Of a stretch of DNA of 64,000 nucleotides, positions 6,486 to 62,804 are shown piece after piece. The first letter of the stretch is position 1. Each line of letters opens with the position of its first letter. The notes beneath the pieces were generated by a model. The model made no database searches. It was not told the DNA's origin and worked only from the letters and a program-made list of their open reading frames with translations. This DNA comes from Podarcis erhardii. Lineage: Eukaryota. Made by a program: the position numbers and the translations under genes. Location of the stretch: assembly GCA_964252035.1 (NCBI GenBank), contig OZ176203.1; one strand, 5' to 3'.

Positions 6486-6710
6486 TGAACATTAGAAGAG
6501 TGAGCTGGATCAGGCCCAGCAGCCCATCTAGTCCAGCGTCCTGTTATCACAGGGGCCAAGTGGATGACTGTGGAAAGTCTGAAAGCTGGACCTGAGGAGA
6601 ACAACGCTCTCCATACTTGTGATTCTCAGTAACTGACATTATGCCTCCAACTGTGGAGATCGAACTTAGTCATTGGCTAGTAACTGTTGATATCCTTATG
6701 CTTCATGAAA
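6486..6710 (-). mobile_element. Degenerate CR1 3' end
   Basis: gaacattagaagag..ctggatcaggcc..cccatctagtccagc pattern typical of squamate CR1 3' UTRs. Confidence 0.6.
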
Positions 6711-8062
6711 GCTGTCCGGTGATGCATTTAGTATTTGTCAGTTAGCTGTAGAACTTTACCTCTGTTTGATTCCATTCTTCAGATGTTAGCCCTGAAAAGA
6801 TACATTCAGGCATGGGTTTCAGTCAAGCATTTTCAGCAGTGAAGGCTGATGCAAAGATATAAGCTTCTCTGCAATCACCCTGTTCTCCCTTAGCTTCTGT
6901 TTTGTCATCTAACAATCCAACTAGCTCCCTGGCTGTCTTAAATGTTACAGCAAGCCTTCCAAAGTTGAGGAAGAATCGTTTGGGTCTTCCTTTATTTACA
7001 TTGTCTGCAAGGATAATCTATATTGTAATCTATAAAATCTGTGAATTAACTAATTTTCACATGCTGGTTATTTTGAATATTTTTAGGTAATTGGGGAGGG
7101 GGAAACACATGTATATTGAAGTCCCATTGACCACTGGAACTCTGATTCAGCTCTTCACCTGTGGATTATACCAGTCATTTTCTACATATGTCCAAGCCTT
7201 TTTGAGCCAAAGAAACAATGACTTGCTTTTTCTTAAAAAGAGCAGCATTGCTGTATCAACATAGAATTGCAGAATAAACATAGCTCTGTTCAAGGACCAA
7301 TGATTTGAGAAATTGCTAATTGGTACTTTTCTGGCTCTGTGTTGATTGGATAAAACTGTTAAACTTAATGAGAGCTATATGTGTAGAAAGTTGTTTTAGA
7401 GAAAATAAGACCCCTTAAATGTTGGATCTTATATTTTGCCTGTAGCTTCTGAATGATAGGCATTTTTTGAGGTTTTATTGTCTTTAGCCTGAAATCTAAA
7501 TAGGCCATTATGACCTATTTGGATCCATAGCAACAGTGTGTTGCATCCTGAATCATACAAATTCAGAAGGATCAACATGGAAGTGAGCGGTGTCTGTATG
7601 GAAGTTAAGAAAAGGGTTTGTGGTTTAGTTTTTTGATGCAGATTTTTGTTTTTACAGTATATGCTGACTAGTGGTGAACACTCTTGTCTTTTACTCTGAT
7701 AGTCCCAAATAGTTCTAACTCTCTTAAACTCCAGATCTACTTTCATTAGGATTCTAGGCCCCATTTTTCAACTCTGTTTTGATAAGGGAGTGCCCTTGGC
7801 TCAATAGAAAGTAACACATACCCCCAACACAATTTCAGGAGTCTCACTTGGCCTTCTGTTGAACCTGTTTTCTTTTTATCTGGGTACAAGCAACCCCTGA
7901 TTTGTGCAGGGGATGCGTTCCGATTCATCATGCACAATGGTATAGCCCATATAAGCCTGCTTGGCCTCTTCTGCCCCCACCTCCACTTCACCCCCTTTTC
8001 CAGCCACTTCCAGGTTACTGTGATGCTTGCATGTGAGGTTGCGCACATATTGAACATCTGTA

Positions 8063-8304
8063 CAGTGGTACCTCGGGTTAAGAACTTAATTCGTTCCGGA
8101 GGTCCATTCTTAACCTGAAACTGTTCTTAACCTGAGGTACCACTTTAGCTAATGGGGCCTCCCACTGCTGCCGCACCACCACTATGCGATTTCTGTTCTC
8201 ATCCTGAGGTAAAGTTCTTAACCTGAGGTACTATTTCTGGGTTAGCGGAGTTTGTAGCCTGAAGCGTCTGTAACCTGAAGCGTCTGTAACCCGGGGTACC
8301 ACTG
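8063..8304. mobile_element. Tc1/mariner (Tigger-like) MITE, 242 bp
   Basis: TIR CAGTGGTACCTCGGGTTA / TAACCCGGGGTACCACTG, TA TSD on both sides; second copy at 59553-59778. Confidence 0.9.
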
Positions 8305-8820
8305 TATATCAATTGTTGCCTGTACTTCTAATGGATTCAGGGAAGTTTAGGATACATATCTGTCTACTGATACATGGAATTTGTTTAGGCAATTTTCACT
8401 TATTCCTCCTTCTCCCTGTGACCCCTGAAAAACCTCTTCAGTAAATTAGGGGATCCTCCAGAATCGGTAGCAAGAATTAGCAAAACTTTCCCCTACGGCA
8501 CGAGCTTCTCTTAGTTTAGAGTCACATCTGTGGAACGAAAACCCTGGATCCAACTCGATGTTTACATAATGTTCTTGGCTAAATGAAAATCAGTGTTTAC
8601 TTGGTATGACTTTATATTAATTGTTTTAACTAGTAGCTAAATGCTTCCTATAGCTTTTTATTTGGACACACCAATTTGTGGAGTCACAGAAAGCTAACAC
8701 TTTGATTAGCATTATATTTAACCATATATTTATTCATCCATTTTCAGTGTATGGGCTAAAACTGCACATGATCCCTATTGTTGTATTCACCATGCAATTT
8801 TTCTTTTTCTTTTTCTGCAG

Positions 8821-8887
8821 AGGATGACAAATAGCAGCAGTTCCCCTAGCCTTCTTAATGACAGTGCCAAGCCCTATGCAGGCCACG
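8821..8887 (+). CDS. PAN3: PAN3 exon 3 (67 bp; RMTNSSSSPSLLNDSAKPYAGH)
   Basis: polypyrimidine tract+cag acceptor, G|gtaaga donor; frame continuous with exons 2 and 4. Confidence 0.95.
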
Positions 8888-9439
8888 GTAAGAAGTTGAC
8901 TTTCTTAACAAAAAAATATTTAATATTTAACAATATGTTTATGTTAATATTTAGCAATATTAATGTTAAGCTATTTTTATGGGGGCAAAGCTTTCAATCG
9001 TTAATGTGGTTGCAATATCTTTAGATTCTTATTTTGATTTTATTTAAAGTGTTTGTATCCTGCCTCTTTCAACAAGTGAGCTCAGTTTTAATTATCATTA
9101 ATGCTTATAATCACCATTTTGTTTTGCTTGCTTTCCATATGTTACTCTGCAACATGTGATATTAAAAAAAGGCAGATTAAATATTTGAACAAAATTCTTG
9201 GGAGCAATCTTTGGCCAGTATTCAAAGAGTTACTTGAGATAAGCCTAAGGGCTTGGGCATGCACAGAGAAATTGCTGTAAAGAGCATAGGCCCTACCTTC
9301 ATAAATTACATTTTAGAGCCACATAGTAAAACAATCTGCTAACAAGCAAGACATGTTTCCTAAACAGTCATCCACTTTGGTTGAAAATGGAAAGCTATTT
9401 TGGTTCTTGTGACCATCTTTTCTGGATTCATCTCGGTTG

Positions 9440-9744
9440 GGGTTTAGGCCCAGCTGTGTGATGTATGGAGGATGGCAGCACGAGAGTCAGCCTTTTCTGT
9501 GGTGTCTCACCATTTGCGGAATCCTCTCCCCTGGGAGGCTCACCTGGTGCCTACATTTCATATATTACATATATTCTCTGCAACCAGTGCTTTGGCTGAT
9601 TACCATTCTATGGCCTTTTAAATGTTTTTGTGGGAGGGGGTTTATTAGTTTGTTTCTGTTTTATTATGTATTTTGTGTTATCATTTTGTATTTTTATGTT
9701 GTGAACCACCCTGTGATCTTTGGATGAATCAATCAGTCAGTCAG

Positions 9745-9780
<36 letters not shown>
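9440..9780 (+). mobile_element. LINE 3' remnant (L2-type) ending in a (TCAA)n tail
   Basis: gcagcacgagagtcagccttttctgtggtg...gtgaaccaccctgtgatc 3' motif followed by microsatellite 9726-9780. Confidence 0.55.
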
Positions 9781-9781
<1 letters not shown>

Positions 9782-10530
9782 CAAATATTCCTTTCCCCCT
9801 GGGCATTTCATTAAAACAATTTAGGAGGCAGACTGTTGTAGAGTCATGGGCATCCCATATAACCTGTTTGTATTTTAATGACATTTAATAATCACCTACG
9901 CAAGTGTTTATGTTATAGGTGTAGCCAGTTCTGTCTGTAATCCTTTAAGCGCCTGTCCATGGGAAACATATGCCATCAAGCAGCTGTATGAATTTACTTT
10001 TCTAACAATTCCTACCATCAGTGCTAGGAACCTTCAGTTGTGCTTCTTTTCCATATGGGAGCCACTTATAAGTAAACAAGGAAGATTTTAAGGGATGTGT
10101 ACATTAATTTTGAGAGCTTAAGATTGCAGAGGACATCATGCAGAATTATCCGGTAGTTGAGAAACTTCGACTTAAAGCACACACAACTCTGAATTAATTA
10201 ACGTATGTCAATGCTAAGTTAACTTCTGCTTTCAATAGGACTTAAATGCTGATATTGATAAAACATAGCCTCTATACAAGTAATCTACTAAACTAGCCCT
10301 TGTATTCCAAAGTCCAAAGAAATTTATAAGCACCACAGTTTTACAGGGCATAGTGATTGTTAACAGAGTGGGAAAGTTAATTCCACTGAACATGCACAGT
10401 TCCTTAGGCACATGCCAAATTATTTTCTGGCTCTACTTTGCAGATTTCAAACACTAACAATGTTATTATATTATATTTAAAATATATTATTATTTTATAT
10501 CTGTATGTGTTTTGTAACCTTTTTTTCTAG

Positions 10531-10601
10531 ATTCTCTTACTTCACCTGGTTCATCCTTGTTCAACGACTTTGCTGCCCTCAGCTTATCTCAAAGGAGAAA
10601 A
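10531..10601 (+). CDS. PAN3: PAN3 exon 4 (71 bp; SLTSPGSSLFNDFAALSLSQRRK)
   Basis: ttctag acceptor, gtaggt donor; matches PAN3 SLFNDFGALNISQRRK. Confidence 0.95.
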
Positions 10602-10833
10602 GTAGGTATTGCCAGAGTTTCTAGATAACAAAAAAGCCACTTGCTTTATTACACACAGCAACTGATAGCTTACACAGTAGCATCAATTATATATATGGCC
10701 ATATGTAATGCACATTTCTGGGCATGCATTTAAGTTCATTTACACAATTGCTTGTAATTGTCTAGATCAGTGCACTCTAACTTGATCCTCTGCCCCTCAC
10801 AATACAAGCAATGCCTTTCTACAATGTTCTATT

Positions 10834-10941
10834 CAGTGCAGTTTTTTTAGAAATAGAGGTGTCGGAACTCACCATGAATGAATGGCAATGGCACTCACCT
10901 GAGAGGTGCTGGAACTGAGTTCCAGCTGAATAAAAGCCCTG
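10834..10941. mobile_element. hAT MITE, 108 bp
   Basis: CAG...CCCTG ends; perfect 8-bp TSD GTTCTATT (10826-10833, 10942-10949). Confidence 0.8.
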
Positions 10942-12342
10942 GTTCTATTGCAATTTGTGGTAAAGACAACATCTTCAAATAGGTGTCTATCAACTTTTAT
11001 TCCAAACAACTCTTGATAAATCCGCTATTTAAGGAGAAAACTTCCTGCAGTAGTCACATTACATAGAGCCATGAAAAATCTGTAAACCATAGACTGAGTA
11101 GTTTTTACTCTACCCCCTGCAGAGAATTTTAAAATTGTGATCATTAAATGCCCACCAACTTATCAAAGCAGTCACTTTCCCTTTATTGAACTTCTGGGGG
11201 TTTCTGTTGTAAAATTTTCAAGATTAGTTAGCTTTTCTTTGCTTGTGAAAATTGCAATAAGAAACCAACATTTACAATTTAATATTATGCCATGTCCTCT
11301 TTATTGCTTTCCCAAGTAACAATCTTTTATGTGCCACTTCATTAAATGAATGCTGTTCTTTGCTGATATTGAAACTTCTGATCTCAAGACTTCACATTAC
11401 AAAAAAAAAAAAAAAAAAAAGAGTTAAGACATTTTTTGTCTTCCCTAGGCAAGGTTTGACAAAGTCTGGGACATTGGCCAAAACTGATTGGTCCCCAAGC
11501 ACCTTTTCCCTTACTCTTTTCGGCTGTAATATATTAAAGTACAGTAAAAAAATAATGGTTCATTCTCAAGGGAACCTAAGTTTAACAGTATAATTAGCAG
11601 AAGATTTTTATTGGCTGAATAGAGAATAACAAATAATTTGACTGCTGTCACAAACCGAAGTGACTTTTGGGCTTCTTGTTCTTTGGGTTGATACAGGCAG
11701 TAGTTTGTTTTAATGCCCCACTGTCCTATCTGTGTATATATAATTTTGCAGGTTTTTGAAGCATTGCAAAAACAAGTTTGATTTTTAGCAAAGACATATG
11801 GAGGGAAAATGCAAGTGTGTCTGTGCAGGTGGTGATTGCTTTATTATAACTTCAGAGAACACACAAGACCACTAACAGGGTTTTCATCCCATCTAAAAGT
11901 ATGTGAAGGCATAGTTTGCATAAATAAATCCTTCTAAGAGAGAAATACACATGTGCTTGGATAATTGCAATTGCTCAAATAAAAGTCACTGTGATGTGCA
12001 AGTCATGATGACTGTGTGTACATCCCTAGGTAGGGGTGCTGACTCATACAAATGAGGTTTTGACTCCTGGCCTTATTGCAAGCCCATCAACAGCCTCACA
12101 CACTCAAGGAGGTGGTTGGATAATTGCCACTGAATGTACAAAGCCAGTTTGGGGACCCTGAACAATATACTCCCACACAAGCATTGCACCATTTACTTCA
12201 TTCGCAAAATAGCTTCTGGGTAATACATTTCAAGATTAGGGCGTTAGGTTGTCAGCGATTTAAATAACACGGATTTATGAACAGTTAACTGTCAGAATGT
12301 TATACTAAGATCTGCTGCCACTGAAACAACGGGGATAATTAG

Positions 12343-12517
12343 CAGGGGTGGACTTTGGTAATATGGCACCATAAGTGAGGACATAATTTGGCGCCCTCCC
12401 ACATCTTGGTTTCCGTTCTGCACATCCTCTAAAGTGCAGTACGTCATAGTTTTGCGTCCTCCTGGCTCGGCTTTCCTGTGTAGGAGAGCTGCACGTACCA
12501 CCCTAAATCCGGTGCTG
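12343..12517. mobile_element. Degenerate hAT-like MITE
   Basis: CAGGGGTGGA.. left end and ..CTAAATCCGGTGCTG right end, flanked by TAATTAG(C) repeats. Confidence 0.45.
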
Positions 12518-14419
12518 TAATTAGCTGCCTGTTAATGTTGTGCACTGACATTTAAGCCAGTAGAATATAGGAAGTTTTGATTGTTAAGCCCCTCTGTGGT
12601 GCATATGGCAGACTCAAGTGTTAAGTGCATTGCAGTTTTTGTTCTGTTACACTCTTGTTTTTATTTTGTAGGAGAAATTTGCTGTTCTGTGCAATTAGGG
12701 TGCACTGTTGTGGTTCGGAAGGCGTGAATTTTTTTTAAGATCTGAGGAGCTTTTCTGTAAAAACCGTCTTCTTTCCTTGTGGAAACATTTTGGATGGATG
12801 ATTTTGCTTGAATCTCTTGTGTCCTAAAAGCTGGGCAAATAAAGCCTACAGTGATGGAATTAGCATTCTTTATAGTAGGAGTAGTGGTGGGTCTTGGTGC
12901 TATAAAAGAGGCAAAAAGACATTTTTATTTTAAAAGGGTTATTTGAGATTTAAAACATCACTGCAATAACTCTGCTTTTTTGGTTATCTTTGTAATTTGA
13001 GACTAGCGTGTACAAGTTTCAAGCAGAAGGAAAATTGAAGTTACTTTAAGTTGTCTTTCTGGTCTGCGGTTTCACAGCAGCCAAAGTTTTTGTGGAAGGA
13101 TGGCATTCAAGTTTCTTAGTTAATGGCTTCAGTTGCCTGTGCGCCTTTACTCATAATTGAGGGATTGGGTCACAGGATTGTGCTATTTGTCTACTAGTCC
13201 CTTCTGTCTCACTCATGTACAGCCAAATTAGTGGTAAGAATGCTCAGTTTTGGTACAAAAGTAGCTACAAATTGTGCTTAAGTGTGTGACATGCGGGATA
13301 CACACACAAGAAAAAAGCACGTTATATTGTAGCCATTCCCGTCCTTTTAATTATTGCTAATGACTGGTATGCATTATAGCTTCATTGAGTTTTCCATGTG
13401 CAGCATATCAAAAGCCAGGATTTTGGTTGTTCAACCTGTTATGTCTTCAGTTACGTTGCAGATGGAGGAAATACTGATCACTAAGGATGTGTTGTGAAAT
13501 TGAATTTGCATTTTTGGCTTTGCAATTTGTGTCTCAACATTTTAAAAATGTGGTCTTTTAAAGAATGTTGAGAGAGGCAACTTTAATCTATTGTTCCATC
13601 ACTTAAAATGAAATATGTCTCATAGCCTAAGAGTTAAAATTTAACTCTATACTTAAAAATCCACCAGAAATTAACTCTTTTCTCTGACTTCTAATATTTA
13701 TCTTCACATTTTCAATTATTCTCAACCATTGGGGCCATAGCTGTATAAGACATAAGACAGTGATAGCTAAAACCGTTCCAGGTTTTGCAACTCTTGAGTG
13801 AATCGCCCCCATTCCAGTGTCTCATATTGCCAAATGCTGAGCAGCATAACACCATAGCATGGATTAGTAACTAATCAAGAGTTGATCAGCATGTTTCCCC
13901 TTTTTCACGTTGGTGTTTTACTGCTTCCTCTTTTCAGTTGTATATATGCCAATTGTACCCCAGAATATAGGTAATACAAGCATGTTAGAGTTCTATCCCC
14001 CCTTGGCATGCATGTAGAACTGTTTTTGGAAATGTGTTCAATCATGTCAACCCCTCACATGCAGTCTGAAGTGGCAAGACCAGGCACATTTTACTCCATC
14101 ACCTATTTCTTGTGAGAACAAGGTCACAATATTAGCACTACTTATCCAGTTCTGTTGTTGGTTGTTTAGTCATTAACTACGAAGGTTGCTAAATTGGGCC
14201 ATGTTATCACTTTATCCAGTTTAAGCTGAGTATTGGTTTTTCTACAGTTTTTGGGCTCCCAGCTTAATCATAGCCAATGAGGTTAATCCAAGGCATAATT
14301 ATTGCTAGTTGAAAATTTCCCCATCTTTCATTGATACATACTTGTTACTGAATAAATATGGACTACGCTGAAATTGCCAAACCCAAGGCAAATCCAGTTT
14401 CTCATTTTATCTGTTTCTA

Positions 14420-22969: not shown

Positions 22970-23149
22970 GAGAAATTCAGAAAAACACTTCCAGGATATT
23001 TCAGTTTTTTCCTGTATTTTAGAGTCTCATTTCAATTAAGCATTCAGATGTGTACATGATGACAGATTTGGCCCTTGTTTGCTAAATTGTTTACTCTTCC
23101 ATCTAAAGAAGTATGTTGTGGCCCTTAGTTGGAATTTGTGAAGGTACTA

Positions 23150-23868
23150 CCGTATTTTTCGTCCCATAGGACACTCCATCCCATAGGACGCACCTACTTT
23201 TTTGTGGGGGGTGGGGGAAATAAAGGAAAATTTTTTTTTCTTTATTCCCCCCCAAAAAAAAACCAGGTCGGGGAACAGTGGGATGGCGGCGCTGTGCCTC
23301 CCCGCTGTCCCCTGAGCTTGTGGGGCTGGCCGATGTCTGTCCGGCGTGCGGGGTGCTCTGCTTCAGGGCACCATGCGCGCCGGGCGGCAGGCTGCTATCC
23401 GCAGCGTGGGGAGCCCTGCGGGGAACTCCTGCAGGGCTCCCCACGCTGTGGATGTCTGTCCGGCGGGCGGCAGGCTGTGGACACCTGCGCGAAGCACGGG
23501 GCGTCCTCCAAAGGGTGCTCCGCGCAGCCGGCTGCCGCCCGCAAGCCCTGCGCGCCGGGGGAGTTCCCCCGGGCGCACAAGGCTTGCGGACACCTGCGCG
23601 AAGCACGGAGCGTCCTCCGGAGGGCGCCCCGTGCTCCGCGCTGCCGGCTGCCTCCCGCAAGCCGTGCGCGCCCGGGGGGAGTTCCCCCGGGCACACAAGG
23701 CTTGCGGATAGCTTCCTGGAGCCTGGAGAGCGAGAGGTGTCGGTGCGCACCGACGCCTCTCGCTCTCCAGGCTTCAGCGAAAGCCTGTATTCACCCCATA
23801 GGACGCACACACATTTCCCCTTCATTTTTGGAGGGGAAAAAGTGCGTCCTATAGTGCGAAAAATACGG
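23150..23868. mobile_element. Tigger/pogo-like MITE, 719 bp, with GC-rich tandem and hairpin interior
   Basis: Perfect 12-bp TIR CCGTATTTTTCG / CGAAAAATACGG, TA TSD; internal 109-bp and 118-bp repeat units at 23479-23705. Confidence 0.9.
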
Positions 23869-24589
23869 TAGTTTGTTCCTGAACAGTTACAGCTTTGAGT
23901 TTTTCCCTTTTGTTGCTTCCTTAAACAGTAAATGCAATTCTAGAAAAGCAATTTGAATTTATTCTTCTAGACCATGAATGAAGAACCCAAGGTCTGTAGA
24001 CAGTAAAAGACTCTTACACATCATTTATGTGTAACCACTTGCAACCAGCTACAACATGTTATCTGTTAATTTGGTATCTCTCCCTCTTCCCTGGTCCAGC
24101 TTCAGCCCATCTTCAGTGAGGATGAGAATGTTGTACCTTAAGAAGATACAGAAGATGCTTGCCTTAAGGCTGTGTGTTGTGGGGGGGAGCATGCTAGTAA
24201 TAGACCTGACAATAGAAGCAGAGCCTGAGGATCATAGTGCTTGTTTGAGAAAACCTATGTTGTGGGGAAAGGTTTTGTGCCTGAGTTCTGGCAAAAAGGG
24301 GAGAAACAATGTCTGTCTGCTTTGAAGAAAATGTGTACATGTCTGTTTTAAGGAAGAGGGAGAATGTTTATTGCTGTGATAGGTGCATACATTGATTTAT
24401 GTAGAATATATTCAGGTATTTGTTGAGATTCCCTCAGGGTCCCTTCCAACTCTGCAATTTTATGATTCAATGTGGAAAAAGGAAATGGGAGTAGTGTAAT
24501 TTTTAACATGTGTGAAGACAGTTGGCTAATCAGCATTTTTATACTATGTGAACAACTTAGCTTTATATTTTTCATTAAGCTGCATATGT

Positions 24590-37394: not shown

Positions 37395-39229
37395 GTAAGG
37401 CCAGCAAATGAGATCTATGTTTTTGTTTTTCCAGTGGACAAAAATTAGGGAACTACAGTTGAAGTATTGTAACTTTGCATTGTACATAGATTTGCTGCAA
37501 TTTAGGCTTCTTGACGTCTTCAGAACATAATGTATACATGGCAGTTGTGCTGGTTATTGCAAACTGGTTTTGATGCTGCATTCACATTGGGCTTTCAATA
37601 CTCTATTTGTAATACTCTATTCCTATAGGTAATATAGTTTGCTGGATCAGGCTGGAGGACATTACTCTCTTAGGGTATGACACCCCCCTCTAGTGATGAC
37701 AAGCAGGGTCCTAGAAAGTCTTTTGCCTCCAAATGGGTCACCTCTTTTCCTTTACAGCAAAAAATCTAAAGGAAAGGGGAGAGAAAACAAAGAGCCCAAA
37801 GGGGAAAGTCTGCACTGACAAAAAGGCATGGGGAGGGAGGTATCTTGCACTGAAACCCCCACGTTGCTAGGGGGCAAGAGGAAACAAAGGGAAATGAGAG
37901 GCAGTTCAGACATGCTAAAAGAAGATTCTCAGATTTAAGGCAAAAAGAAGGCCAGCAAACAAGCCAGGAAGAAGAGGAGGAGTTGATAAGGACTTTTGAC
38001 TGTACAGTGAAAGTTCTCTTCCCTCTTCTTTCTCCATTCACCCCATAAATCCGATCTGAGTTTCTCCCAACCCTTTGGAGCTTAGTGGGTTGAGTTCAGT
38101 TGCTTGCAGTGTGGCTTGGGTTGTGTTTTTTTTTTTGGGGGGGGGGAGTCCTAGGTTGTTGGGTCAGGTTAGCCATTTGTAATGGTGGTGTGGTTTTTTT
38201 AAAAGAGGCATTTGTACAAAGGGCAAAACTTACAGAACGTAACTGTGTGTGTGTGTGTGTGTGTGTGTAGAAACAGGGTTTTGTTGTAATTTTCTCATTT
38301 CCCTTAATTTGCATTTGGCAGCACAAGGCTTTGTATTAAGATAGGGTCTCTTAGTACATTGTGCTTTAAACAGCTTCATCACTTGTTAGTAAAACTGGTA
38401 TTTGACAGTTAAAGGAAGAGAATTGTGGTTACATGGTGGTTTTTCCACATTGTATTCTGCTGTCACCATGTGGTTAGACTTTTTTTTTTGCCTTGTCATT
38501 TGTTAACACCATCAAGAATTTTATTGTCTAGGATGTGGTATAATAAAGTTTTCTGACAGATGAATGAAGGCATAACAGGTTCGGTTTATTTCTGCACTAG
38601 ACACCTGTGAACCAGGGGACTAGTGGTGCCCCGGTTAACATCCCTTGAACGTGGCAGCCCCTGTTGGTTTGAGCAGGAAGTTGCTTATCTTCAAACCGGA
38701 ACAAAAACCCAAACCACTAGAGTGGAGGCAGGGGGGAGATGCAGAATTGAAAGCAAACATTTAATGTGATCAGGCTTACTGAAAGAAACAAAATCCATTT
38801 TTTAACCAGTCTCTAGATGTATTATTGATTTCACACAACGGACTAAACCAGTTTTCCACAAATCCACAGCAGATTGAAGGCAGCAGTGTGTGTTTTCTAA
38901 ATTGCTGTGTTTTGTAGTTACTAAAAGTATTTCCTCATTCAGTATCGCTTGTGTAAAGATCTTCACTTTTGTCAGGCTAAAAGTAGAAAGCTTATTCCGG
39001 AAATGCTGTATTTCTGAATGCACTTGAGAGGCATTTGTATGCACATCTGTGTGACCCATCAAGGTCGGTTAGATTATAATTGTTTGAAGACCCTCACGCA
39101 AGTATGGCAAACTGGGGGGGGGGGGGAATACTCCCTGTAGTTAAAAATGCACTTCAAGGGGGTTGTTGCAGGAGAAAGGTCATGGCAAATAGTGTGTTTG
39201 CACTGCAAAGTAGCTAAACTGCTCTGGTA

Positions 39230-39595
39230 AAAAGGTAAAGATACCCCTGCCCGCACGGGCCAGTCGTGTCCGTCTCTAGGGTTGTGTGCCTATCTCACTT
39301 AAGAGGCCGGGGGCCAGCGCTGTCCGGAGACACTTCCGGGTCACGTGGCCAGCGTGACGAAGCTGCTCTGGCGAGCCAGCACCAGCGCAGCACACGGAAA
39401 CGCCATTTACCTTCCCGCTATAAAGCGGTACCTATTTGTCTACTTGCACTCGAGTGCTTTCGAACTGCTAGGTGGGCAGGAGCTGGGACCGAAAGACGGG
39501 AGCTCACCCCGCCGTGGGGATTCAAACCGCCGACCTTGCGATCAGCAAGTCCTATGCACAGAGGTTTTACCCAGAGCGCCACCCGCGTCCCCCCA
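39230..39595 (-). mobile_element. Sauria SINE, apparently full length
   Basis: GGGACGCGGGTGGCGCT.. tRNA-like head on the minus strand, (ACCTTT)-type tail; 14-bp TSD AAACTGCTCTGGTA (39216-39229, 39596-39609). Confidence 0.9.
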
Positions 39596-40759
39596 AAACT
39601 GCTCTGGTACCAAACACCAAAGCTGCTCTTCAAACCTGGGGTACTAAAGAGCTATTTGTGGGAAGTGATCCTTGAGTGGAATTCCTCTTGAGGGCAATGT
39701 GCATGATGCATGCCTTTGAATCACAACTCAGTTCTACATTGTATTTGGGCTCCATTATTCACAGTTCTGGCGTTAACAAACACACCCAAACACCATTCCT
39801 TTTCTTCAGAACTCAAGTCGTATTAACCTGCTTGGCTATCTTTGAAAAAGATGGGGAGTTTTTGAAAGCTAATAGCTGTAGTATATTGCCAGAAGTACAT
39901 TATTTCCTCAGCAAAGTGCTTGATTCATTGAAAGGTTCTTAAAGGGTTACTGTCAAGCAACAGTCATGAAACAAAACCCTAGGACGAAAAACGTGAAGCG
40001 TTCCAAATCTACTGAGTCATAGTATTTGTTGCTTGTGTATTTGAGCATATGTTTTAAACATGCGATGGGATTTGGGTTCATTAACTTGGATACCTTTTTT
40101 GTTTTTATATGGAAATACAGAAACAACATTGCTTCTGATGTAGTATGAATAAGGGCTTTGGCAGTGTATGTTTGCTTCTTTTGCTGCTTGCCTGGTACAT
40201 TTGAAGAGCCCTGCTCGCTCTCAGGCCAGTAGCCCATCTAATCCAGTCTGACATAATATATAACTAGAAATGCTTGTGATAAGGTCACAAGCAGGGCATG
40301 GTGCCAGTAATGCTGCCCCTTTGCTGCCATCCAGCAACTGGTGCTCAGTGGCACACTGCCTCTAACATTAATATTCTGCTAAGCCATCTTTGCTAATAGC
40401 AATTTATGGGTAAACAAATGTATAATCCACCTTTAAAGCTGCTTAAGCTGGTGGACGGTGCAACATATTGTGGCAGCCAGTACCAAAAATTAATTATGAT
40501 ACACTAAGGGATTGTAGCTGCACAATAAAATTCCACCTTTATACAGTCTGTCTTACTTTTAGTACAATTAAAAGTAAAACAAAACGGCAGTTGTAATTGG
40601 GTTGGGTGGGTTGTTCTTACAATTGCCAGTTGCTTTGAAATAAAGCAGATAATGATTTTAATTAACTAGCATTTTGAAAGAACTTTTGTATTCATTATCC
40701 AAACACTTACACAGCTGAAAGTTGTAGATTTCATTCATTTTCTCCCATTCTTCTGATAG

Positions 40760-54558: not shown

Positions 54559-54918
54559 CAACTATGTAGACCAGAAGCAGCTTCTAGCCTGGTCAGTTTC
54601 ACCATCCTCCCATAGCATTGCCTGAGACAAGTGTAAGGATCTGTACTTAGGAAGTGAGAGAAATACAGTGCACAGAAATACAGTGAGAGAAATACAGGGC
54701 TCCCTCCCTGCTGTTCCCCTCACACATTTGAATAGTTACTGGGTTCCTGCCGTTGGGTGGAAGCTAGTGCTACAGCCCAGAAATAGCCTGTACTCTACAG
54801 GGGTGCTGTTGGGTCAGTGAGTAGCAGGAAGGAGCGTTCAGTATTTTAAATGGTGATAGTGAAGAGATGCAGCTCAGTGGAGGAGCAGCTGCTTTGAGTA
54901 GTTCAAAGTCCTTCCTTG

Positions 54919-55120
54919 CTACACTGGAGGAGTGGAATAGCGAACCACCGAGTTATAGCTGGGAGGAGAAAAGCCCTGCATCTGCTTCCCTTCCCAGCCT
55001 GTGCTGCCGCAGGTAAATGGCAGAGTCACATCGCTGATGTGGCCGCAGCTGGAACTGTAAACCTTTGGCTTTGCGATGTCACAAAGGACAGACTCCTTGC
55101 TTCGGCTGCCAGAGAGGAGG
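54919..55120 (-). CDS. FLT1: FLT1 exon 30 coding part (LLSGSRSKESVLCDIAKPKVYSSSCGHIS...SPPSYNSVVRYSTPPV*)
   Basis: tgtag acceptor; TAG stop; C-terminus matches FLT1 YNSVVLYSTPPI. Confidence 0.92.
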
Positions 55121-55817
55121 CTACAAGCAAAAGCAGACGTGTGTTAGATTAAAATTATGTATCATTAATATGTTTCCACTATCCTCACCAATGCTATAGA
55201 GCATGAACTTGTTTGGGAACTGCATTTAGGATTTCTCATGCCCAAAACAAGATGCAGTCTTTTCTTTTTTTTTCCTTTTAAGCAAGTCTGACCAACTTCC
55301 TTACTGTCCATTCACTGCTTAGAATAATTCCTGTTAATACAGCCTTTTCATGGGCAAGCCCTTATTCCCTAGACAGGAGCTAGGCAGAGGAAGGCGGCTA
55401 ACACAACATGGCAGAGGGCAGGAACAAAAATAATGCTCTTGCATCCCTCCATTGTCATGTTGTCAAAGGGAAGGGGCACTAAGAACAAAATCCACACCCT
55501 GCCCCCAGCTCTATAATGTGGTCGTTTTTGTATATTGCTAACTCAAACACAAGGCAGGGACCAAATTGACCAGTGCTGTGGGAGGTGTAAATCTTCCCCC
55601 TTCTGCAATCTTCCACCTGCCCATAAAAGCCACCCCATAGAACAAGATGTACCCATATGATACCTGATACCCATAGGGCAAACAGCAGATGAATGGAGAG
55701 TGTCTTTCTCAGGAAAATGGCTCACAGGAATAGGGTTAACACACCCTTTAAGTGACACAAGCAAATGTCCCCACTTTGTGTCTCGTTGCATCCTGAATAG
55801 TCATTGAAATCACATAC

Positions 55818-55909
55818 CCAAAGAAAGTTTGCTTTTGTTTGCTGCCTGTCCATGTAAAACGCTTCCGTTCTTCTGAAGGCAGCACCATCCCACTGTCGGC
55901 CTGGTAATC
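55818..55909 (-). CDS. FLT1: FLT1 exon 29 (92 bp; DYQADSGMVLPSEERKRFTWTGSKQKQTFF)
   Basis: ttcag acceptor, gtatgt donor; resembles recalled chicken FLT1 DYQADSGMVLASEELKRFTWTGSKQK. Confidence 0.92.
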
Positions 55910-56000
55910 CTGAAAAAGAACACACCTTCGGTAATGCAACTTTGTTCCTTGTGTGTTCAAGTTTACCACAGTTACACATTGACTCTGAATAACCCATCAT

Positions 56001-56882
56001 CTACATGGCCCTAGATTGACTTTTTGGTAAAAGTGCAACCATGTAGGGCAGGGGTGTCAAACTCAAATTCATCGAGGGCCGCATCAGCAGTTTGGTCACC
56101 CTCAAAGGGCCGGTTGTATCTGTAGGACTATGTGTCCACTCTTTATTATCACTTTCCCATCTCTCCTTAAATTGCCTTCCCTCTGCATCAGCTCCGCCTC
56201 CGCCACTTCCACCGCCCCCCAAGGCCTGGTCGCTCTTCTTGCGCTTGTACTTGTCCTTGTACATCTTGTTGTGGTGCCTCTTGCACATCCAGGGCTTGCG
56301 CTGCTTGGCCACTTGCGTGGTGGTCTCGCTGCAGCCTTTGTAGGCGCAGCTTTTGCAGCCGCCTCCTCCTCCTCCTCCCCCCGACTGGGCGCCGCCCTCC
56401 TCCTCCTCATCCAGATCCTCCAGGACTCCGCCGGGGCTGCTGGCGCTGTCGCCTCCGCCCCCGCCGCCGCCCGCGTCACCCGCCGCCGCCGGGCCCAGCT
56501 CATAGAAGAACATGAGGCCCGAGGGCACCTCTGAGGCCCCCCGCAACGGTGGCTGCGGCTGCTGCACCACCTGGGGCTGCAGCAAGGCGCCCACCGCCTC
56601 CCCGTCCCCGCCGCAGGGCTGCATCACCAGCAGCGTGAGCAGCTGCGGCGGGGAGGGGGAAGGCGACGATGAGGAGAAAGCGGCCGAGCTGCCGCTTGTG
56701 TTCCCGGAAGGCTCCGTCCCTCCAGCAGGCCTCGCAGCCAGGGCCTCCCGCAGGGCCCCTCGGCTGCCACAGCAATGGCAAACGGGCGCCACGGGCCAGG
56801 CGCTGACAGGTTGCCGGCTATTACGCATGCGCGGGGAAGGTGGTGTGCACGCGACCTCCGCCTCCTTTCCCCGGAAGCTCAT
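56001..56882 (-). pseudogene. RFXAP: Captured RFXAP exon-1 fragment forming a 293-aa ORF; RFXAP homology ends near 56160 and the last ~50 aa come from hAT end and intron readthrough
   Basis: TLLVMQPC, LEDLDEEE and CAYKGCSETTTQVAKQRKPWMCKRHHNKMYKDKYKRKKSDQAL match recalled human RFXAP; no sequence for the C-terminal RPTLLEQVLNQKRLSLLRSPEVVQFLQ region found in the window. Confidence 0.85.
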
Positions 56883-57198
56883 TTAAGCATGCAAGCGAAG
56901 AGGCGGCAACGGCGGGGCTTTCCCCCCCAATCCTTCCCTGCCTGCGCATGAGCGTTGCACGCCCGACGTCACGCATGTTCAAAAAAGGCCGCTAGGTTAA
57001 GCGATCTCCTTTATGATATTGGAGTTAGCGGGAGGATTCGTTGCGCGCATGCGCCGTCTCGTTGGCAGCCTGTTCGATGGGCAGGTGGGAAGCAACTGGG
57101 CTTCTAATAGCGGCCTGGGGCTACACGGCTACACGGGCCACATGACGAGGTCTGGCGGGCCGGATTCGGCCCGCGGGCCTTGTGTTTTGACACCCGTG
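56049..57198. mobile_element. Non-autonomous hAT (Charlie/MER58-like) DNA transposon carrying captured host DNA (Pack-hAT), 1150 bp
   Basis: Left end CAGGGGTGTCAAAC; right end reverse complement CACGGGTGTCAAAA (12/13 TIR match); perfect 8-bp TSD ATGTAGGG at 56041-56048 and 57199-57206; subterminal GGCCCGCGGGCCGAATCCGGCCCGCC resembles Charlie-type ends. Confidence 0.9.
56820..57120 (-). promoter_or_regulatory. CpG-island-type promoter captured with RFXAP exon 1
   Basis: High CpG density; NRF1-like ACGCATGCGC (~56823) and GCGCATGCGC (~57045); CRE-like GACGTCA (~56965); ETS-like CCGGAAG (56871). Confidence 0.6.
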
Positions 57199-57871
57199 AT
57201 GTAGGGTGTTCAACAACTGTGCAAAACATGTACCTGTGTATGCAAAGAGTTGAGTTTGTACACCAATATTCACATGTAACATTCAATGACCATAAAGTCT
57301 GTATACACAACAGCTTAGCTGTACAAATCAACAAGGGTACACCCACAAATACTTGTTTATGTTTAGAGACAGCTTGTACTTGTATTTGGGGTAATATGTG
57401 AATAAGCCTTATGTTAGCTGCAAGAAAAGTGGTGTGTGAGCAGTGGTAAAAAAAGTATTTCTGTTCCCAAAAAAGTGATAAATTATCAAATTGTTAACTA
57501 TTTCTTAGTTGACACTCTTTGTCCACTGAGACTAAGTAGGACTGCACTTTTTGGTGTTACGGTTTAGCATATCTTTACATATCAGAGATATTCTTGGAGT
57601 TCTCTGAGCGTAGACTCAGTTACAAGCTTCAGGGACACAAAAAGGAGACCTGGCTCACAGAAGCTTTACATACTCCCAATTCTTCTCTGGCTCATATCAA
57701 AATTCTTAGTTCACCTAGCCAACCACCTCACTTCTCCATCAGCCCTCTTCCTTCCATAAATTAGTCTTGGAGCCCCTTCAAGTCAGTGGTGTTTTTTGCA
57801 GGTGTATTCTGCAATGTGTTGGGCTCGTAGCTTCTTGCTGAAATGCTGTAACTTTTCATCCCACAAACGTT

Positions 57872-58164
57872 TATTTTTAATAAATAAATAAATAAATAAA
57901 TTTTATTTCCAGTTTTTCTTAAAAATATTTTACATCAATAGAAATCCAGTATTACAATACACAAAAATATTCTGTTTCCCCTCACCCCTTTTGTGGTTTC
58001 TTATTTTAATTCATAACACTGCATTTTCTTCGTCGTTCTAATTATTAATTACTCCTTCAAATTTTCTTTGAACTGTTTGGTTTAAATTAATCCTCCTAAT
58101 GAACTTATGTCTGTACAATGACATTTCAAACAATCTACAAATTTTCCCCAGTCACTGATAAAGT
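57872..58164 (-). mobile_element. 5'-truncated L1 LINE (ORF2 C-terminus, 3' UTR and (TAAA)-rich tail)
   Basis: Encodes KNFISDWGKFVDCLKCHCTDISSLGGLI*; 19-bp TSD TTTTCATCCCACAAA(C/T)GTT at 57853-57871 and 58165-58183. Confidence 0.8.
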
Positions 58165-59420
58165 TTTTCATCCCACAAATGTTCTGGGGTGTGTGTGTAC
58201 ATGTCCCCTTTTGGTGTTGCAGAATATACCTGCAAAAAAGCACCAGTTTGGAAGGGTGGTCCTGCCATTGACACAATAATAGCACATTAGTGGTGGATTT
58301 ACACTACACTGCCCCCTCCGCTGCACTGGTTATTATGTGCTGCTTTTGCCACGTTGCTGCATTATTGCCATCTGGAGGGGGCACTCTTGCACAACTAAAT
58401 TGGGCAATAGGGTGGGGAAACAACCCAGTTACAGGATTTCAGAAGGAAGCTATGGGAAATGGCACTGGTTGGGAATGAAGCGGTATGTCCAAACCTAAAC
58501 CTTTAGCAGGCACAGAGAGCACTGATCGTGTATCTCGCTTTTGTAAAGAACTATGCAGAAATTCTGGTTTTAGTATGTTGGCTGTTTGGCCGTGATAATA
58601 AACATTCATTTATTTAACACCACCATGAGCACAAAACACTGTGTATGCACAATAAAAATGACATCAGGAGGTGCCCACTCCATGTTGTGATGGGAGCAGA
58701 TGGGGCAGTACCCCCAGCTACAATTAAAAAATTAAAGAACCATTTTTTGTTCACTGCTAATACAGCAGCAGAGAAGGCCACCATAACTCTTGGGAGTTAT
58801 AGTTTTTCCAAGGGCTACTGCAAGCTCCATACTCCTACCTCCTGTAATCTGCTGCTCCTATTGAAAGAGGTTTGGGGAGGTAGGTGAGTGACTGATTTCA
58901 AAAAGTCAGAATAGCTAAGTGATATATTCCCAACTTTTTCCCAAGTCAGTTTGTGGTTTGGGGAGCTTGCCCATCAACTGCCCTGAGGTTCAGGTGGAGG
59001 GATTGGATAGAAATGAAGGAGTAATTAGACTAGTTCCACTGTTACACTCTACTGTGACAAACGGAGAAAAGGCCAGCCATGGTGGGGAGTGTGCACTGCA
59101 TCCCTCCTAGAGGTCCCTGCAACATACAAACACTCTCTCCACACAGATATATCACACCCAGCACATTATTTACCATTTGGCTAATTAACAGTCTGGGGGA
59201 GGGGGATCAATGCTACTTTTAAACATGTTACTCTCGCCGTGCACATCAGCAGGACAATACCAACTTGCACAGCAAAATGAGTCACTCTTCCCACAACATC
59301 AGCCCATTCTGGAGGAAGATGACCACAAAGGATCTGTTGTATTCCTCTTTAGCTCAGCAACACAAGGCTGGATCTAAAATGGCACACACCACACATTTTA
59401 GTAGGTTGATCGTGACTTAC

Positions 59421-60346: not shown

Positions 60347-60452
60347 CTGCTTTACGTTTGCTTGAAGTAGATCTCCCAATCTCTCCACCAGCTCTGAGAA
60401 TCTTGGCCTTTCCTTTGGATCCCCTTGCCAGCAATCCAGCATGATTTGATAT
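60347..60452 (-). CDS. FLT1: FLT1 exon 26 (106 bp; [35 protein letters not shown]), GC donor
   Basis: ggcag acceptor, CAG|gcaagc donor; FLT1-type DPKERPRF motif. Confidence 0.92.
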
Positions 60453-62704: not shown

Positions 62705-62804
62705 ATCTCTGGGGTTGCAAAATCTGGGGCTTTCATTCTTATGCCTTCTTTTAACTTGTTGAAAAAGTCTTCATCTATCTGAACACCTGGATAAGGAGAT
62801 GCAC
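62705..62804 (-). CDS. FLT1: FLT1 exon 25 (100 bp; [32 protein letters not shown])
   Basis: tttag acceptor, gtacga donor; VEGFR kinase C-lobe peptide; exon size as recalled for human. Confidence 0.92.

What the first reader, a model, noticed from the sequence alone, without database searches (positions are those of the whole stretch)
56041..57206. Pack-hAT: a DNA transposon carrying the RFXAP promoter and first exon into FLT1 intron 28
Seen in sequence: a ~1-kb very GC/CpG-rich island, unlike the AT-rich flanks, is bracketed by hAT termini (CAGGGGTGTCAAA at 56049; TTTGACACCCGTG ending 57198). The whole unit is flanked by an exact 8-bp TSD, ATGTAGGG. The island encodes clear RFXAP exon-1 motifs (TLLVMQPC; CSETTTQVAKQRKPWMCK.H.NKMYKDKYK.KKSDQAL). 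Established: 8-bp TSDs and CAG-starting short TIRs typify hAT elements, and in human RFXAP is several Mb from PAN3-FLT1 rather than nested in FLT1. Inference: this is DNA-level gene capture (transduplication) by a non-autonomous hAT. The cargo includes upstream promoter DNA and has no poly(A) tail or exon 2-3 sequence, which argues against a retrocopy. Pack-TIRs are well known in plants but sparsely documented in amniotes.
Basis: partly seen in the sequence, partly recalled or inferred. Interest (0 to 1): 0.92.

Follow-up and report, generated by a model that had tools for sequence, protein, structure and literature searches.

The report
hAT transposon carrying RFXAP gene start
A 1.15-kb cut-and-paste (hAT-type) transposon that picked up the promoter region and most of the first exon of the immune-regulator gene RFXAP has jumped into an FLT1 intron of a wall-lizard-like genome. 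It is a real, recently mobile, multi-copy example of gene capture by a DNA transposon, a process that is known but rarely seen in vertebrates.

Summary

**The element.** Window 56049-57198 is a 1150-bp non-autonomous hAT-type element. It has 13-nt terminal inverted repeats (TIRs, 12/13 matching) and an exact 8-bp target-site duplication (TSD), ATGTAGGG.

**The cargo.** Bases 56191-57120 (minus strand) are 92.7-93.5% identical to the RFXAP locus of Podarcis muralis and P. raffonei. They cover -496 to +434 around the annotated start codon. The cargo stops 95 bp before the exon-1 splice donor. The window has no exon 2 or 3 and the element has no poly(A) tail.

**Empty site.** Contigs from two closely related organisms (about 1.3% flank divergence) join 56040 directly to 57199. 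This is a precise empty site with one TSD copy.

**Copy number.**
- The hAT arms are present at hundreds of copies in the four runs laid.
- The cargo, including its junction with non-RFXAP DNA, is present at roughly 5-20 copies.
- So a loaded element transposed here. In-situ gap filling is unlikely.

**Timing.** The capture post-dates the P. muralis split.

**State of the cargo.**
- It is decaying: 27 of 101 parental CpGs are now TG/CA, against 1/75 and 4/74 in the parental genes.
- Residues that are the same in all seven orthologues compared are replaced.
- The 293-aa chimeric ORF is therefore probably not a functional gene.

**Novelty.** This is a new member of a known kind (animal Pack-TIRs, Tan et al. 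2021). The scan's first stage noted this same stretch once more, as a chimeric ORF (s1-259149).

The parts
56041..56048 (.). Left copy of the 8-bp target-site duplication, ATGTAGGG
   Evidence: Read directly. The empty-site contigs of organisms B and C end their left block at 56040 (records 17 and 24).
56049..56061 (+). Left terminal inverted repeat, CAGGGGTGTCAAA
   Evidence: (I9). It starts with CAGGG, like the lizard hAT TIRs listed in PMC3014272.
56049..56190 (+). Left hAT arm. About 56049-56151 is shared with hundreds of other copies. 56152-56190 is subfamily-specific or filler DNA of unknown origin, not RFXAP-derived.
   Evidence: word depth is 3,200-13,400 (79,500 in X11) against 12-22 for unique DNA, and loose ends lie at 56129, 56147 and 56151; no match to the Podarcis RFXAP loci.
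56191..56624 (-). Captured RFXAP coding part. It runs from the conserved MQPC start to ...KKSDQALGGGGSGGGG, which is 434 bp or about 82% of exon 1. It is truncated 95 bp before the exon-1 splice donor.
   Evidence: 95% identity to P. muralis; exon map of the parent; protein alignment; PF15289 positions 2-49 of 122.
56625..57120 (-). Captured RFXAP upstream region of 496 bp (5' UTR plus presumed promoter). It is a CpG island with GCGCATGCGC and TGACGTCG motifs.
   Evidence: 90.7% identity to P. muralis L001:9504-10000; P. raffonei. The motifs were read. Promoter status is inferred.
57121..57198 (+). Right hAT arm. From about 57126 it is shared with other copies. A tandem 8-bp repeat, GCTACACG x2, at 57120-57135 straddles the capture junction.
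   Evidence: depth; loose ends 'before 57126'; 11-19 contigs per run diverge right after ...GACACCCGTG at 57198. (tandem repeat).
57186..57198 (-). Right terminal inverted repeat, CACGGGTGTCAAA on the minus strand
   Evidence: The G/C difference from the left TIR is also present in the other copies' ends (loose-end consensus GACACCCGTG).
57199..57206 (.). Right copy of the target-site duplication, ATGTAGGG
   Evidence: The empty-site contigs resume at 57199.
56001..56882 (-). 293-aa chimeric ORF. It reads from the RFXAP upstream region through the exon-1 part, then through the hAT arm, the TSD and 40 nt of FLT1 intron.
   Evidence: It is probably not under selection. Other frames of the same GC-rich DNA hold ORFs of 83-134 aa.
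55820..55909 (-). Neighbouring FLT1 exon (DYQADSGMVLPSEERKRFTWTGSKQKQ...). It has the same orientation as the cargo. The insertion lies 131 nt upstream of its acceptor.
   Evidence: peptide; AG acceptor and GTATGT donor read directly. The boundaries are approximate.

Best explanation
This is a Pack-hAT: a non-autonomous hAT-superfamily element whose interior has been replaced by 930 bp of the host RFXAP gene.

**Cargo.** It holds 496 bp upstream of the start codon plus the first 434 bp of exon 1. The capture was at the DNA level, presumably by template switching during gap repair or replication. That mechanism is inferred.

**History.**
- The loaded element was then mobilised in trans by a hAT transposase encoded elsewhere (inferred) and amplified to roughly 5-20 copies.
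- Loaded copies occur in the three closely related organisms sampled (A, B and C) and in a fourth, organism E, whose relatedness could not be established.
- The capture post-dates the split from Podarcis muralis.
- The copy in the window was pasted into an FLT1 intron, 131 nt upstream of an exon and in sense orientation, creating the 8-bp duplication ATGTAGGG.
- That insertion happened after the window's organism separated from two relatives about 1.3% diverged, which still have the empty site.

**Fate of the cargo.** It no longer behaves as a protected CpG-island promoter or a constrained gene. Its CpGs decay at a methylated-DNA rate, and conserved RFXAP residues have been replaced. The part of the protein needed for RFX-complex assembly is absent, so the copy is most likely an inert gene fragment. 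Residual promoter activity is possible but untested.
For: **Anatomy.**
- TSD and TIRs.
- Cargo boundaries and 92.7-93.5% identity to the P. muralis and P. raffonei RFXAP 5' regions.
- The parent gene has 3 exons, and the cargo ends 95 bp before the exon-1 donor.
- No exon 2 or 3 anywhere in the 64 kb.

**Insertion is derived.**
- X4 record 17 (2086 nt) and X5 record 24 (2115 nt) run contiguously from 56040 to 57199, with 600-1400 nt on each side.
- The window organism's own contigs run from unique flank into the first 23 nt and the last 13 nt of the element (records 9 and 14).

**Family.** The arms are at hundreds-fold depth, with many loose ends exactly at the element tip.

**Loaded copies are multi-copy.**
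- Cargo bins are at 5-25 times unique depth in A, B and C.
- Up to 7 distinct contigs overlap a single cargo site.
- X2 record 10 (56138-56344, 0 mismatches, depth 73 against 13-22) and X4 record 18 (56149-56344, 1 mismatch, depth 128 against 17.5) bridge the RFXAP/non-RFXAP junction at 56190/56191. The second comes from an organism that lacks the FLT1 insertion.

**Timing.** There are 5 outgroup-polarised derived sites shared by the cargo and P. raffonei, and none shared by the cargo and P. muralis.

**Decay.**
- 27 of 101 parental CpGs are TG/CA in the cargo, against 1/75 and 4/74 in the parents. Non-CpG change is 2.3%.
- The asymmetry against P. muralis is 30 to 2.
- R>H in KRH[R]NK and T>A in CKSC[T]Y fall at residues that are the same in all 7 orthologues aligned.

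**Class.** Lizard hAT families have TIRs CAGGGGTCCCCAAACT and CAGGSRTGTCCAACCT with 8-bp TSDs of pattern NTNTANAN (PMC3014272).
Against: - No autonomous partner or transposase was found, so the superfamily assignment rests on TSD length and TIR motif only.
- No second loaded copy was seen with its own flanks and TSD. Copy number comes from summed word depth, which the tool warns is not a copy number, and from counts of distinct contigs.
- The window organism's contigs enter the element by only 23 and 13 nt. That is below the tool's 31-letter bridging rule, and the run may be the very sample the assembly came from.
- Parental RFXAP DNA of the window's own genome could not be read, because the locus was withheld.
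- The transcription start site is unmapped, so 'promoter' is inferred.
- dN/dS of 0.43-0.51 does not by itself show neutrality.
- Organism E holds the loaded element but no alignable flank, which is unexplained.
Confidence: 0.85

Rival explanations
1. In-situ capture (transposition-independent gap filling). An empty hAT MITE inserted into the FLT1 intron in the window's lineage. Later a double-strand break inside it was repaired using the RFXAP 5' region as an ectopic template. This is the route Tan et al. 2021 favour for single-copy animal Pack-TIRs.
For: Most animal Pack-TIRs are single-copy and explained this way (PMC8277862). RFXAP and FLT1 lie on the same chromosome in human (recalled, not tested here), and that model has a cis bias. 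The empty sites in B and C do not by themselves tell whether a loaded or an unloaded element inserted.
Against: The same junction between RFXAP sequence and non-RFXAP sequence (56190/56191) sits on multi-depth contigs in the window's organism. It also sits on such a contig in organism B, which lacks the FLT1 insertion (records 10 and 18). Cargo is at 5-25 times unique depth in A, B and C, with up to 7 distinct contigs per site. The cargo lineage has 2.3% non-CpG change, more than the roughly 0.6% per lineage available since the insertion (flank divergence about 1.3%).
Confidence: 0.07
2. The loaded element, or this copy of it, has been co-opted. Either its CpG island works as a new internal promoter in FLT1, or its intact 293-aa ORF encodes a truncated RFXAP-like protein.
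For: The ORF is open for 293 codons. The cargo still meets CpG-island criteria: GC 0.67, o/e 0.79. It lies in sense orientation 131 nt upstream of an FLT1 exon. A proportion of animal Pack-TIRs are transcribed as chimeras (PMC8277862). RNA runs of related organisms hold 9-15% of the element's words, though this could equally be parental RFXAP mRNA.
Against: There is methylation-type CpG decay: 27/101 against 1/75 and 4/74. Private replacements fall at residues that are the same in all seven orthologues compared. Only positions 2-49 of the 122-position RFXANK-binding domain are present. The exon-1 donor is missing. GC-rich DNA gives long ORFs in every frame here. The insertion is absent from the closest relatives, so no conservation can be claimed.
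Confidence: 0.06
3. Assembly artefact: a chimeric join placed an RFXAP 5' fragment between two unrelated hAT ends.
For: High-copy repeats at both ends are where assemblers mis-join. Short-read contigs of the same organism stop inside the TIRs, so they do not independently cross the whole element.
Against: The exact 8-bp TSD is matched by a single copy at the empty site in two other organisms, and the break points fall exactly at the TIR tips. The flank-to-TIR transitions are present in independent k-mer contigs on both sides (records 9 and 14). Contigs bridging the cargo/arm junction have 0-1 mismatches (records 10 and 18).
Confidence: 0.02

Closest known systems
Multicopy animal Pack-TIRs, e.g. 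Pack-hAT-N8_XT carrying the CAPSL 5' UTR in Xenopus tropicalis (Tan et al. 2021, PMC8277862)
   Same: A non-autonomous hAT carries a few hundred bp from the 5' end of a host gene and has been amplified by transposition. Relatives have orthologous sites that are empty of both TE and cargo. The parental sequence is GC-rich.
   Different: The host is a squamate; the one lizard in that survey, Anolis, had 0 Pack-TIRs. The cargo is larger (930 bp) and includes upstream promoter-like DNA plus coding sequence. Copy number appears higher (about 5-20 against 3). The empty site is seen in relatives only about 1.3% diverged, so the transposition step is much better resolved than in frog, where the outgroup is 57 My away.
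Ssk-FB4 of Drosophila melanogaster (same paper)
   Same: A loaded TIR element carrying upstream region plus genic sequence, moved to several loci, each copy with its own TSD, and polymorphic.
   Different: Ssk-FB4 carries a nearly complete gene and shows evidence of translation and positive selection. Here only a truncated first exon is carried, and it shows decay. The superfamily also differs (FB4 is MULE-like, with 9-10-bp TSDs).
Pack-MULEs of rice and other grasses
   Same: TIR elements carry host gene fragments, with a reported preference for GC-rich 5' gene ends (recalled from the literature, not tested here). They are multi-copy and are often non-functional fragments.
   Different: The superfamily differs (Mutator, 9-11-bp TSDs, long TIRs). 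They are found in plants, in thousands of copies.
Lizard hAT non-autonomous families and hobo elements with 'filler DNA' (Novick et al. 2010, PMC3014272)
   Same: 8-bp TSDs, CAGGGG... TIRs, and high-copy non-autonomous derivatives. The hobo elements of Anolis incorporate extraneous DNA.
   Different: The filler reported there is mostly other TEs, not host promoter or exon sequence. The TIR here (CAGGGGTGTCAAACTC) is similar to but not identical with any listed family. The closest is hAT-N5_AC, CAGGSRTGTCCAACCT.
Processed retrocopy of RFXAP
   Same: A partial extra copy of a host gene at an ectopic site.
   Different: The copy here has upstream non-transcribed-like DNA, no poly(A) tail and no exon 2-3 sequence. 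It ends inside exon 1 and is framed by TIRs with an 8-bp TSD.

Membership tests
hAT superfamily (non-autonomous member) | 8-bp target-site duplication | tested here: met
   An exact ATGTAGGG lies on both sides and does not extend. A single copy lies at the empty site in two relatives.
hAT superfamily (non-autonomous member) | Short TIRs beginning 5'-YARNG, similar to described hAT families of lizards | tested here: met
   The TIRs are CAGGGGTGTCAAA and CACGGGTGTCAAA. The published Anolis hAT TIRs are CAGGGGTCCCCAAACT and CAGGSRTGTCCAACCT.
hAT superfamily (non-autonomous member) | TSD consensus (nTnnnnAn; NTNTANAN for the CAGGGG-type lizard families) | tested here: inconclusive
   ATGTAGGG matches T2, T4 and A5 but has G where A7 is expected. 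One site cannot test a weak consensus.
hAT superfamily (non-autonomous member) | Mobilised by a hAT transposase (BED finger, DDE, hATC dimerisation domain) from an autonomous element with matching TIRs | not testable with these tools
   The element and the window hold no transposase ORF. The genome could not be searched.
Pack-TIR (Tan et al. 2021) | TIR-TE termini enclosing non-TE host sequence that has a separate parental locus | tested here: met
   The cargo is 92.7-93.5% identical to the 3-exon RFXAP genes of two Podarcis species. A full-length RFXAP protein exists for the genome whose locus was withheld. Contigs of single-copy depth, about 90% identical, are present in the window's organism.
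Pack-TIR (Tan et al. 2021) | Multicopy class: the same chimeric structure at several loci with distinct TSDs | tested here: inconclusive
   The same internal junction lies on multi-depth contigs in two organisms, cargo depth is 5-25 times unique, and up to 7 distinct contigs overlap one site. The flanks and TSDs of the other copies were not seen.
Processed retrocopy | Spliced exons, a poly(A) tail, and no sequence upstream of the transcription start | tested here: not met
   Only part of exon 1 is present. 496 bp upstream of the ATG is included. There is no A-run at either cargo end.
Functional RFXAP paralogue | Complete RFXANK/RFX5-binding C-terminal domain and purifying selection | tested here: not met
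   Only positions 2-49 of the 122-position PF15289 profile are present. Residues that are the same in all seven orthologues compared are replaced. CpG decay is seen. dN/dS alone is inconclusive.

The most novel reading that the evidence does not exclude
Wall lizards may harbour a currently or very recently active hAT lineage that repeatedly captures CpG-island promoters and first exons of host genes and scatters them through introns. RFXAP is the case shown here. Unverified first-stage notes on the same genome report hAT elements with GNAL-XL exon 1 at four loci, a CENPW promoter, and other GC-rich cargoes. This would be a vertebrate counterpart of rice Pack-MULEs. With many closely related Podarcis genomes, it would be a natural system for watching how multicopy Pack-TIRs arise, for example by replication-fork switching versus gap filling. 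The unexplained presence of near-identical loaded copies in an organism (E) whose FLT1 flanks do not align would, in this reading, reflect introgression or horizontal transfer of a host-gene-carrying transposon.
Probability: 0.3. Interest if true: 0.78.

Novelty: new member of a known kind. Interest (0 to 1): 0.55.

Why it matters
Gene capture by cut-and-paste transposons is a major source of new gene structures in plants. In animals it has been catalogued only once: 370 cases in 100 genomes, only four of them multicopy, and none in the one lizard examined.

This element gives a clean, well-resolved case:
- precise empty sites in relatives about 1.3% diverged;
- a parental gene in hand;
- several loaded copies shared across species;
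- a measurable shift of the cargo from a protected CpG island to methylated, decaying DNA.

It shows that a loaded hAT was still mobile within the recent radiation of wall lizards. It offers material to test how multicopy Pack-TIRs originate. It also allows a test of whether dispersed promoter fragments perturb host genes, since this copy lies 131 nt upstream of an FLT1 exon in sense orientation.

There is a practical lesson for annotation too. 'CpG islands' and RFXAP-like ORFs inside lizard introns can be transposon cargo.

Tried and rejected
- **Other hAT copies in the sequence I held.** There are none in the 64-kb window and none in 53 kb of P. muralis and P. raffonei DNA. L001:18480-18545 holds the end of a different but structurally similar MITE.
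- **Exact-sequence look-ups of the 293-aa ORF**: it is not on record.
- **Protein search with the chimeric tail** (56004-56345, minus strand), meant to catch ORFs of other loaded copies or of empty arms: only ordinary RFXAPs came back. No other copy was retrieved as DNA.
- **Full-text search for the TIR string**: only unrelated primer hits.
- **dN/dS**: 0.43-0.51 against the parents, with only 5 differences between the two parents. It is uninformative, because CpG decay inflates dS.
- **Real RFXAP gene nested here:** rejected. There is no exon 2 or 3 within 64 kb, TIRs and TSD are present, and relatives have the empty site.
- **Retrocopy:** rejected (see the membership test).
- **Fetching the P. 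lilfordi RFXAP locus:** I did not try another route.
- **Other CpG-rich spots in the window** (16.0, 23.2-23.9 and 39.1-39.6 kb): I inspected the last two to see whether they were further loaded hATs. They are a different TIR element and a SINE-like insertion. The 16.0-kb spot was not examined.
- **Expression** could not be tested, because the single read-laying run went to DNA runs.
Full report
**1. The observation**

- ATGTAGGG lies at 56041-56048 and again at 57199-57206, and the neighbouring bases do not extend the repeat.
- Immediately inside are CAGGGGTGTCAAA (56049-56061) and its imperfect inverted partner TTTGACACCCGTG (57186-57198), matching at 12 of 13 positions (I9).
- These are the only two matches to the motif in the window.
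- With up to two mismatches the motif alone is not rare: 2.2 are expected by chance. The significance therefore comes from the arrangement: inverted orientation, direct contact with an exact 8-bp repeat, and the independent confirmation in section 3.
- Between the termini GC rises to 0.60-0.745, against 0.34-0.48 outside.
- CpG o/e is 0.79 in the interior and 0.27 for the whole window.

**2. What the interior is**

The minus strand carries a 293-codon ORF at 56001-56882.
- Its best database matches are RFXAP proteins: E=1.9e-79 to 1.7e-73, including 87% identity to Podarcis muralis RFXAP over the aligned part.
- Pfam finds only the first 48 of the 122 positions of the RFXANK-binding domain.

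I fetched the P. muralis RFXAP locus (L001) and the P. raffonei locus (L003).
- Window 57120-56191 aligns colinearly with L001:9504-10437 at 92.4-92.7% identity, and with L003:9514-10434 at 93.5%.
- In the parent, exon 1 is L001:10001-10534, exon 2 is 12402-12512 and exon 3 is 12888-12995.
- The cargo is therefore 496 bp of upstream DNA plus the first 434 bp of the coding part of exon 1.
- It stops 95 bp short of the exon-1 splice donor.
- The window has no exon 2 or 3 anywhere (tblastn). Neither cargo end has an A-run.
- This excludes both a retrocopy and a resident RFXAP gene.

The remaining 142 bp on the left (56049-56190) and 78 bp on the right (57121-57198) have no counterpart at the RFXAP loci.

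**3. Evidence from other genomes**

Public runs that hold the stretch were found. Contigs of four of them, from organisms coded A, B, C and E, were laid on 54600-58600 at 80% likeness or better. Four results matter.

(a) *Empty sites.*
- In organism B, one 2086-nt contig (record 17) aligns to 54616-56040 with its positions 85-1458, and continues without a break (position 1459 onward) at 57199-57818.
- In organism C, a 2115-nt contig (record 24) does the same.
- Both therefore have a precise empty site with one copy of ATGTAGGG.
- Their flanks differ from the window by about 1.2-1.4%.

(b) *The window's own organism.*
- In organism A, a 1541-nt contig (record 9) runs from unique flank to 56071, and a 644-nt contig (record 14) runs from 57186 into the right flank.
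- They enter the element by only 23 and 13 nt. That is what a k-mer assembler does at a high-copy repeat, but it is below the tool's 31-letter bridging criterion.
- The run may also be the sample the assembly was made from.
- So this is supporting evidence, not proof, of the junctions.

(c) *The arms are high-copy.*
- Their summed word depth is 3,200-13,400 in A, B and C, against 12-22 for unique sequence.
- Other copies diverge inward at 56129, 56147 and 56151, and at 57126.
- They diverge outward exactly after ...GACACCCGTG (11-19 contigs per run).
- The arms therefore belong to a family with hundreds of copies.

(d) *The cargo is also multi-copy.*
- Depth over 56208-57011 is 106-232 in A, 175-431 in B and 40-134 in C. 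That is roughly 5-25 times unique depth.
- Up to seven different contigs overlap single cargo positions, including non-repetitive promoter positions such as 56951.
- Contigs that bridge the junction between RFXAP and non-RFXAP sequence at 56190/56191 have multi-copy depth:
  - record 10 in A (56138-56344, no mismatch, depth 73);
  - record 18 in B (56149-56344, one mismatch, depth 128 against 17.5).
- B lacks the FLT1 insertion yet has about seven copies' worth of the same capture junction.
- Word depth is not a true copy number, as the tool warns. Together with the contig counts, it still shows several loaded copies per genome.

**4. Transposition or in-situ filling**

Tan et al. (PMC8277862) report that most animal Pack-TIRs are single-copy and arise by gap filling inside a TE that was already in place. 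Multicopy ones, only four in 100 genomes, spread by transposition.

Three points here favour transposition of an already loaded element over filling of an empty MITE at this site:
- relatives have sites empty of both TE and cargo;
- the capture junction is shared across loci and species;
- the cargo lineage has accumulated 2.3% non-CpG change, more than the time since insertion would allow, given flank divergence of about 1.3% in total.

How the original capture happened cannot be told from one copy. There are two leads only. A tandem GCTACACG GCTACACG lies at 57120-57135 across the right junction. The other copies' internal sequence just before 57126 resembles the RFXAP sequence there (loose-end consensus).

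**5. Timing**

The cargo was aligned with the two parental orthologues and a distant squamate outgroup (L002).
- The cargo has 47 private differences.
- It shares 19 sites with P. raffonei against P. muralis, and 11 the other way.
- Among the sites the outgroup polarises, 5 derived states are shared by the cargo and P. raffonei, and none by the cargo and P. muralis.
- The capture therefore post-dates the P. muralis split, within the genus.

The insertion into FLT1 is younger still, because it post-dates the separation from organisms B and C.

**6. State of the cargo**

- Of 101 CpGs shared by both parental genes, 27 are TG or CA in the cargo. The parental lineages lost 1 of 75 and 4 of 74.
- Against P. 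muralis the asymmetry is 30 to 2.
- Per site this is about six times the cargo's non-CpG rate. That is the signature of germline methylation, so the cargo lost the protection its parent enjoys as a CpG island.
- The cargo also carries private replacements at residues that are the same in all seven RFXAP orthologues aligned: R>H in KRHRNK and T>A in CKSCTY.
- dN/dS against the parents is 0.43-0.51, but it is confounded by CpG decay at synonymous sites.
- The 293-codon ORF reads through the hAT arm and TSD into the FLT1 intron.
- Other frames of the same GC-rich DNA hold ORFs of 83-134 codons, so an open frame here is weak evidence.
- I conclude that the copy is most likely an inert fragment.
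- It still scores as a CpG island. It also keeps GCGCATGCGC- and TGACGTCG-type motifs that are conserved in the parents. Residual promoter activity is therefore not excluded.

**7. Genomic context**

- Minus-strand exon peptides identify the host gene as FLT1, on the minus strand: [12 protein letters not shown]... near 62796, [32 protein letters not shown] near 60442, and DYQADSGMVLPSEERKRFTWT from 55909. The comparison with human FLT1 is from memory.
- The cargo has the same orientation as FLT1.
- The insertion lies 131 nt upstream of the acceptor of the exon at about 55820-55909.
- The intron number was not checked.
- The locus of the P. lilfordi RFXAP protein (P0121, 253 aa, full-length) was returned as 'withheld'. 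I take this as a hint that the window comes from that genome and that its parental gene is intact. This is inference, and I did not try to obtain the DNA by another route.

**8. Classification and novelty**

- An 8-bp TSD and CAGGG-initial short TIRs fit hAT.
- Published lizard hAT families have very similar TIRs, CAGGGGTCCCCAAACT and CAGGSRTGTCCAACCT, and TSD pattern NTNTANAN (PMC3014272).
- No transposase partner could be sought.
- The element meets the definition of a Pack-TIR. It belongs, on depth evidence, to the rare multicopy class.
- The only lizard in the published survey (Anolis) had none (supplementary file 4).
- The library holds no later paper on animal Pack-TIRs.
- This is therefore a new member of a known kind: well resolved and recently mobile, but not a new mechanism.

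First-stage notes on the same genome describe hAT elements carrying GNAL-XL exon 1 at four loci, a CENPW promoter, and other GC-rich cargoes. These are unverified. If they hold, they would make the lineage-wide phenomenon more interesting than this single copy.

**9. Unexplained**

- Organism E shows zero depth on every unique flank bin, yet it holds the cargo at 92-97.5% identity and the arms at very high depth.
- E and F hold a larger share of the element's exact words than B and C appear to.
- This could be a filter hole, a more distant host with near-identical loaded copies, or introgression. None of these could be tested further.

Noticed in passing
window 23146-23872: A different TIR element. 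It has 27-nt inverted ends (ACTACCGTATTTTTCG..CATAGGAC, 89% complementary) enclosing a very GC- and CpG-rich interior (GC up to 0.76) built from nested palindromes. It is a second 'CpG island' in the window that is really transposon interior. Its superfamily and TSD were not determined.
   Followed up: partly
window 39231-39596: A CpG-rich insertion of about 365 bp, SINE-like, flanked by direct repeats of AAACTGCTCTGGTA (39217-39230 and 39597-39610). ARAGORN calls no tRNA in it.
   Followed up: partly
Read-laying run X11 (organism E) on window 54600-58600: Depth is zero on all unique FLT1 flank bins, but the RFXAP cargo is present at 92-97.5% identity and the hAT arms at very high depth. E and F also share more of the element's exact 31-mers than B and C appear to. 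Possible explanations are a filter hole, introgression, or horizontal transfer of the loaded element.
   Followed up: no
window 57280-57413 and 57816-58600: The right flank of the insertion consists largely of other high-copy repeats. Their depth is 300-900 against 12-22 for unique DNA in A-C, and many contigs skip 57814-58430. These are probably nested or variable TE insertions, and they were not analysed.
   Followed up: no
L001:18480-18545 (P. muralis, downstream of RFXAP): The end of another MITE with the same subterminal architecture (GGGCCGGAT...CCGGCCC..GGGCCTTAGTTTGCCTACCCATG) but a different tip. This suggests several related hAT-like MITE families in wall lizards.
   Followed up: no
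L003:11877-19062 (P. raffonei RFXAP intron 1): About 7 kb is present in P. raffonei and absent from the P. muralis orthologue (L001:11845/11876). It is a lineage-specific insertion in the parental gene's intron. Its content was not examined.
   Followed up: no
window 57120-57135: A tandem duplication of 8 bp (GCTACACG GCTACACG) lies exactly at the junction between the RFXAP-derived cargo and the right hAT arm. It may be a footprint of the template switch that created the chimera.
   Followed up: no
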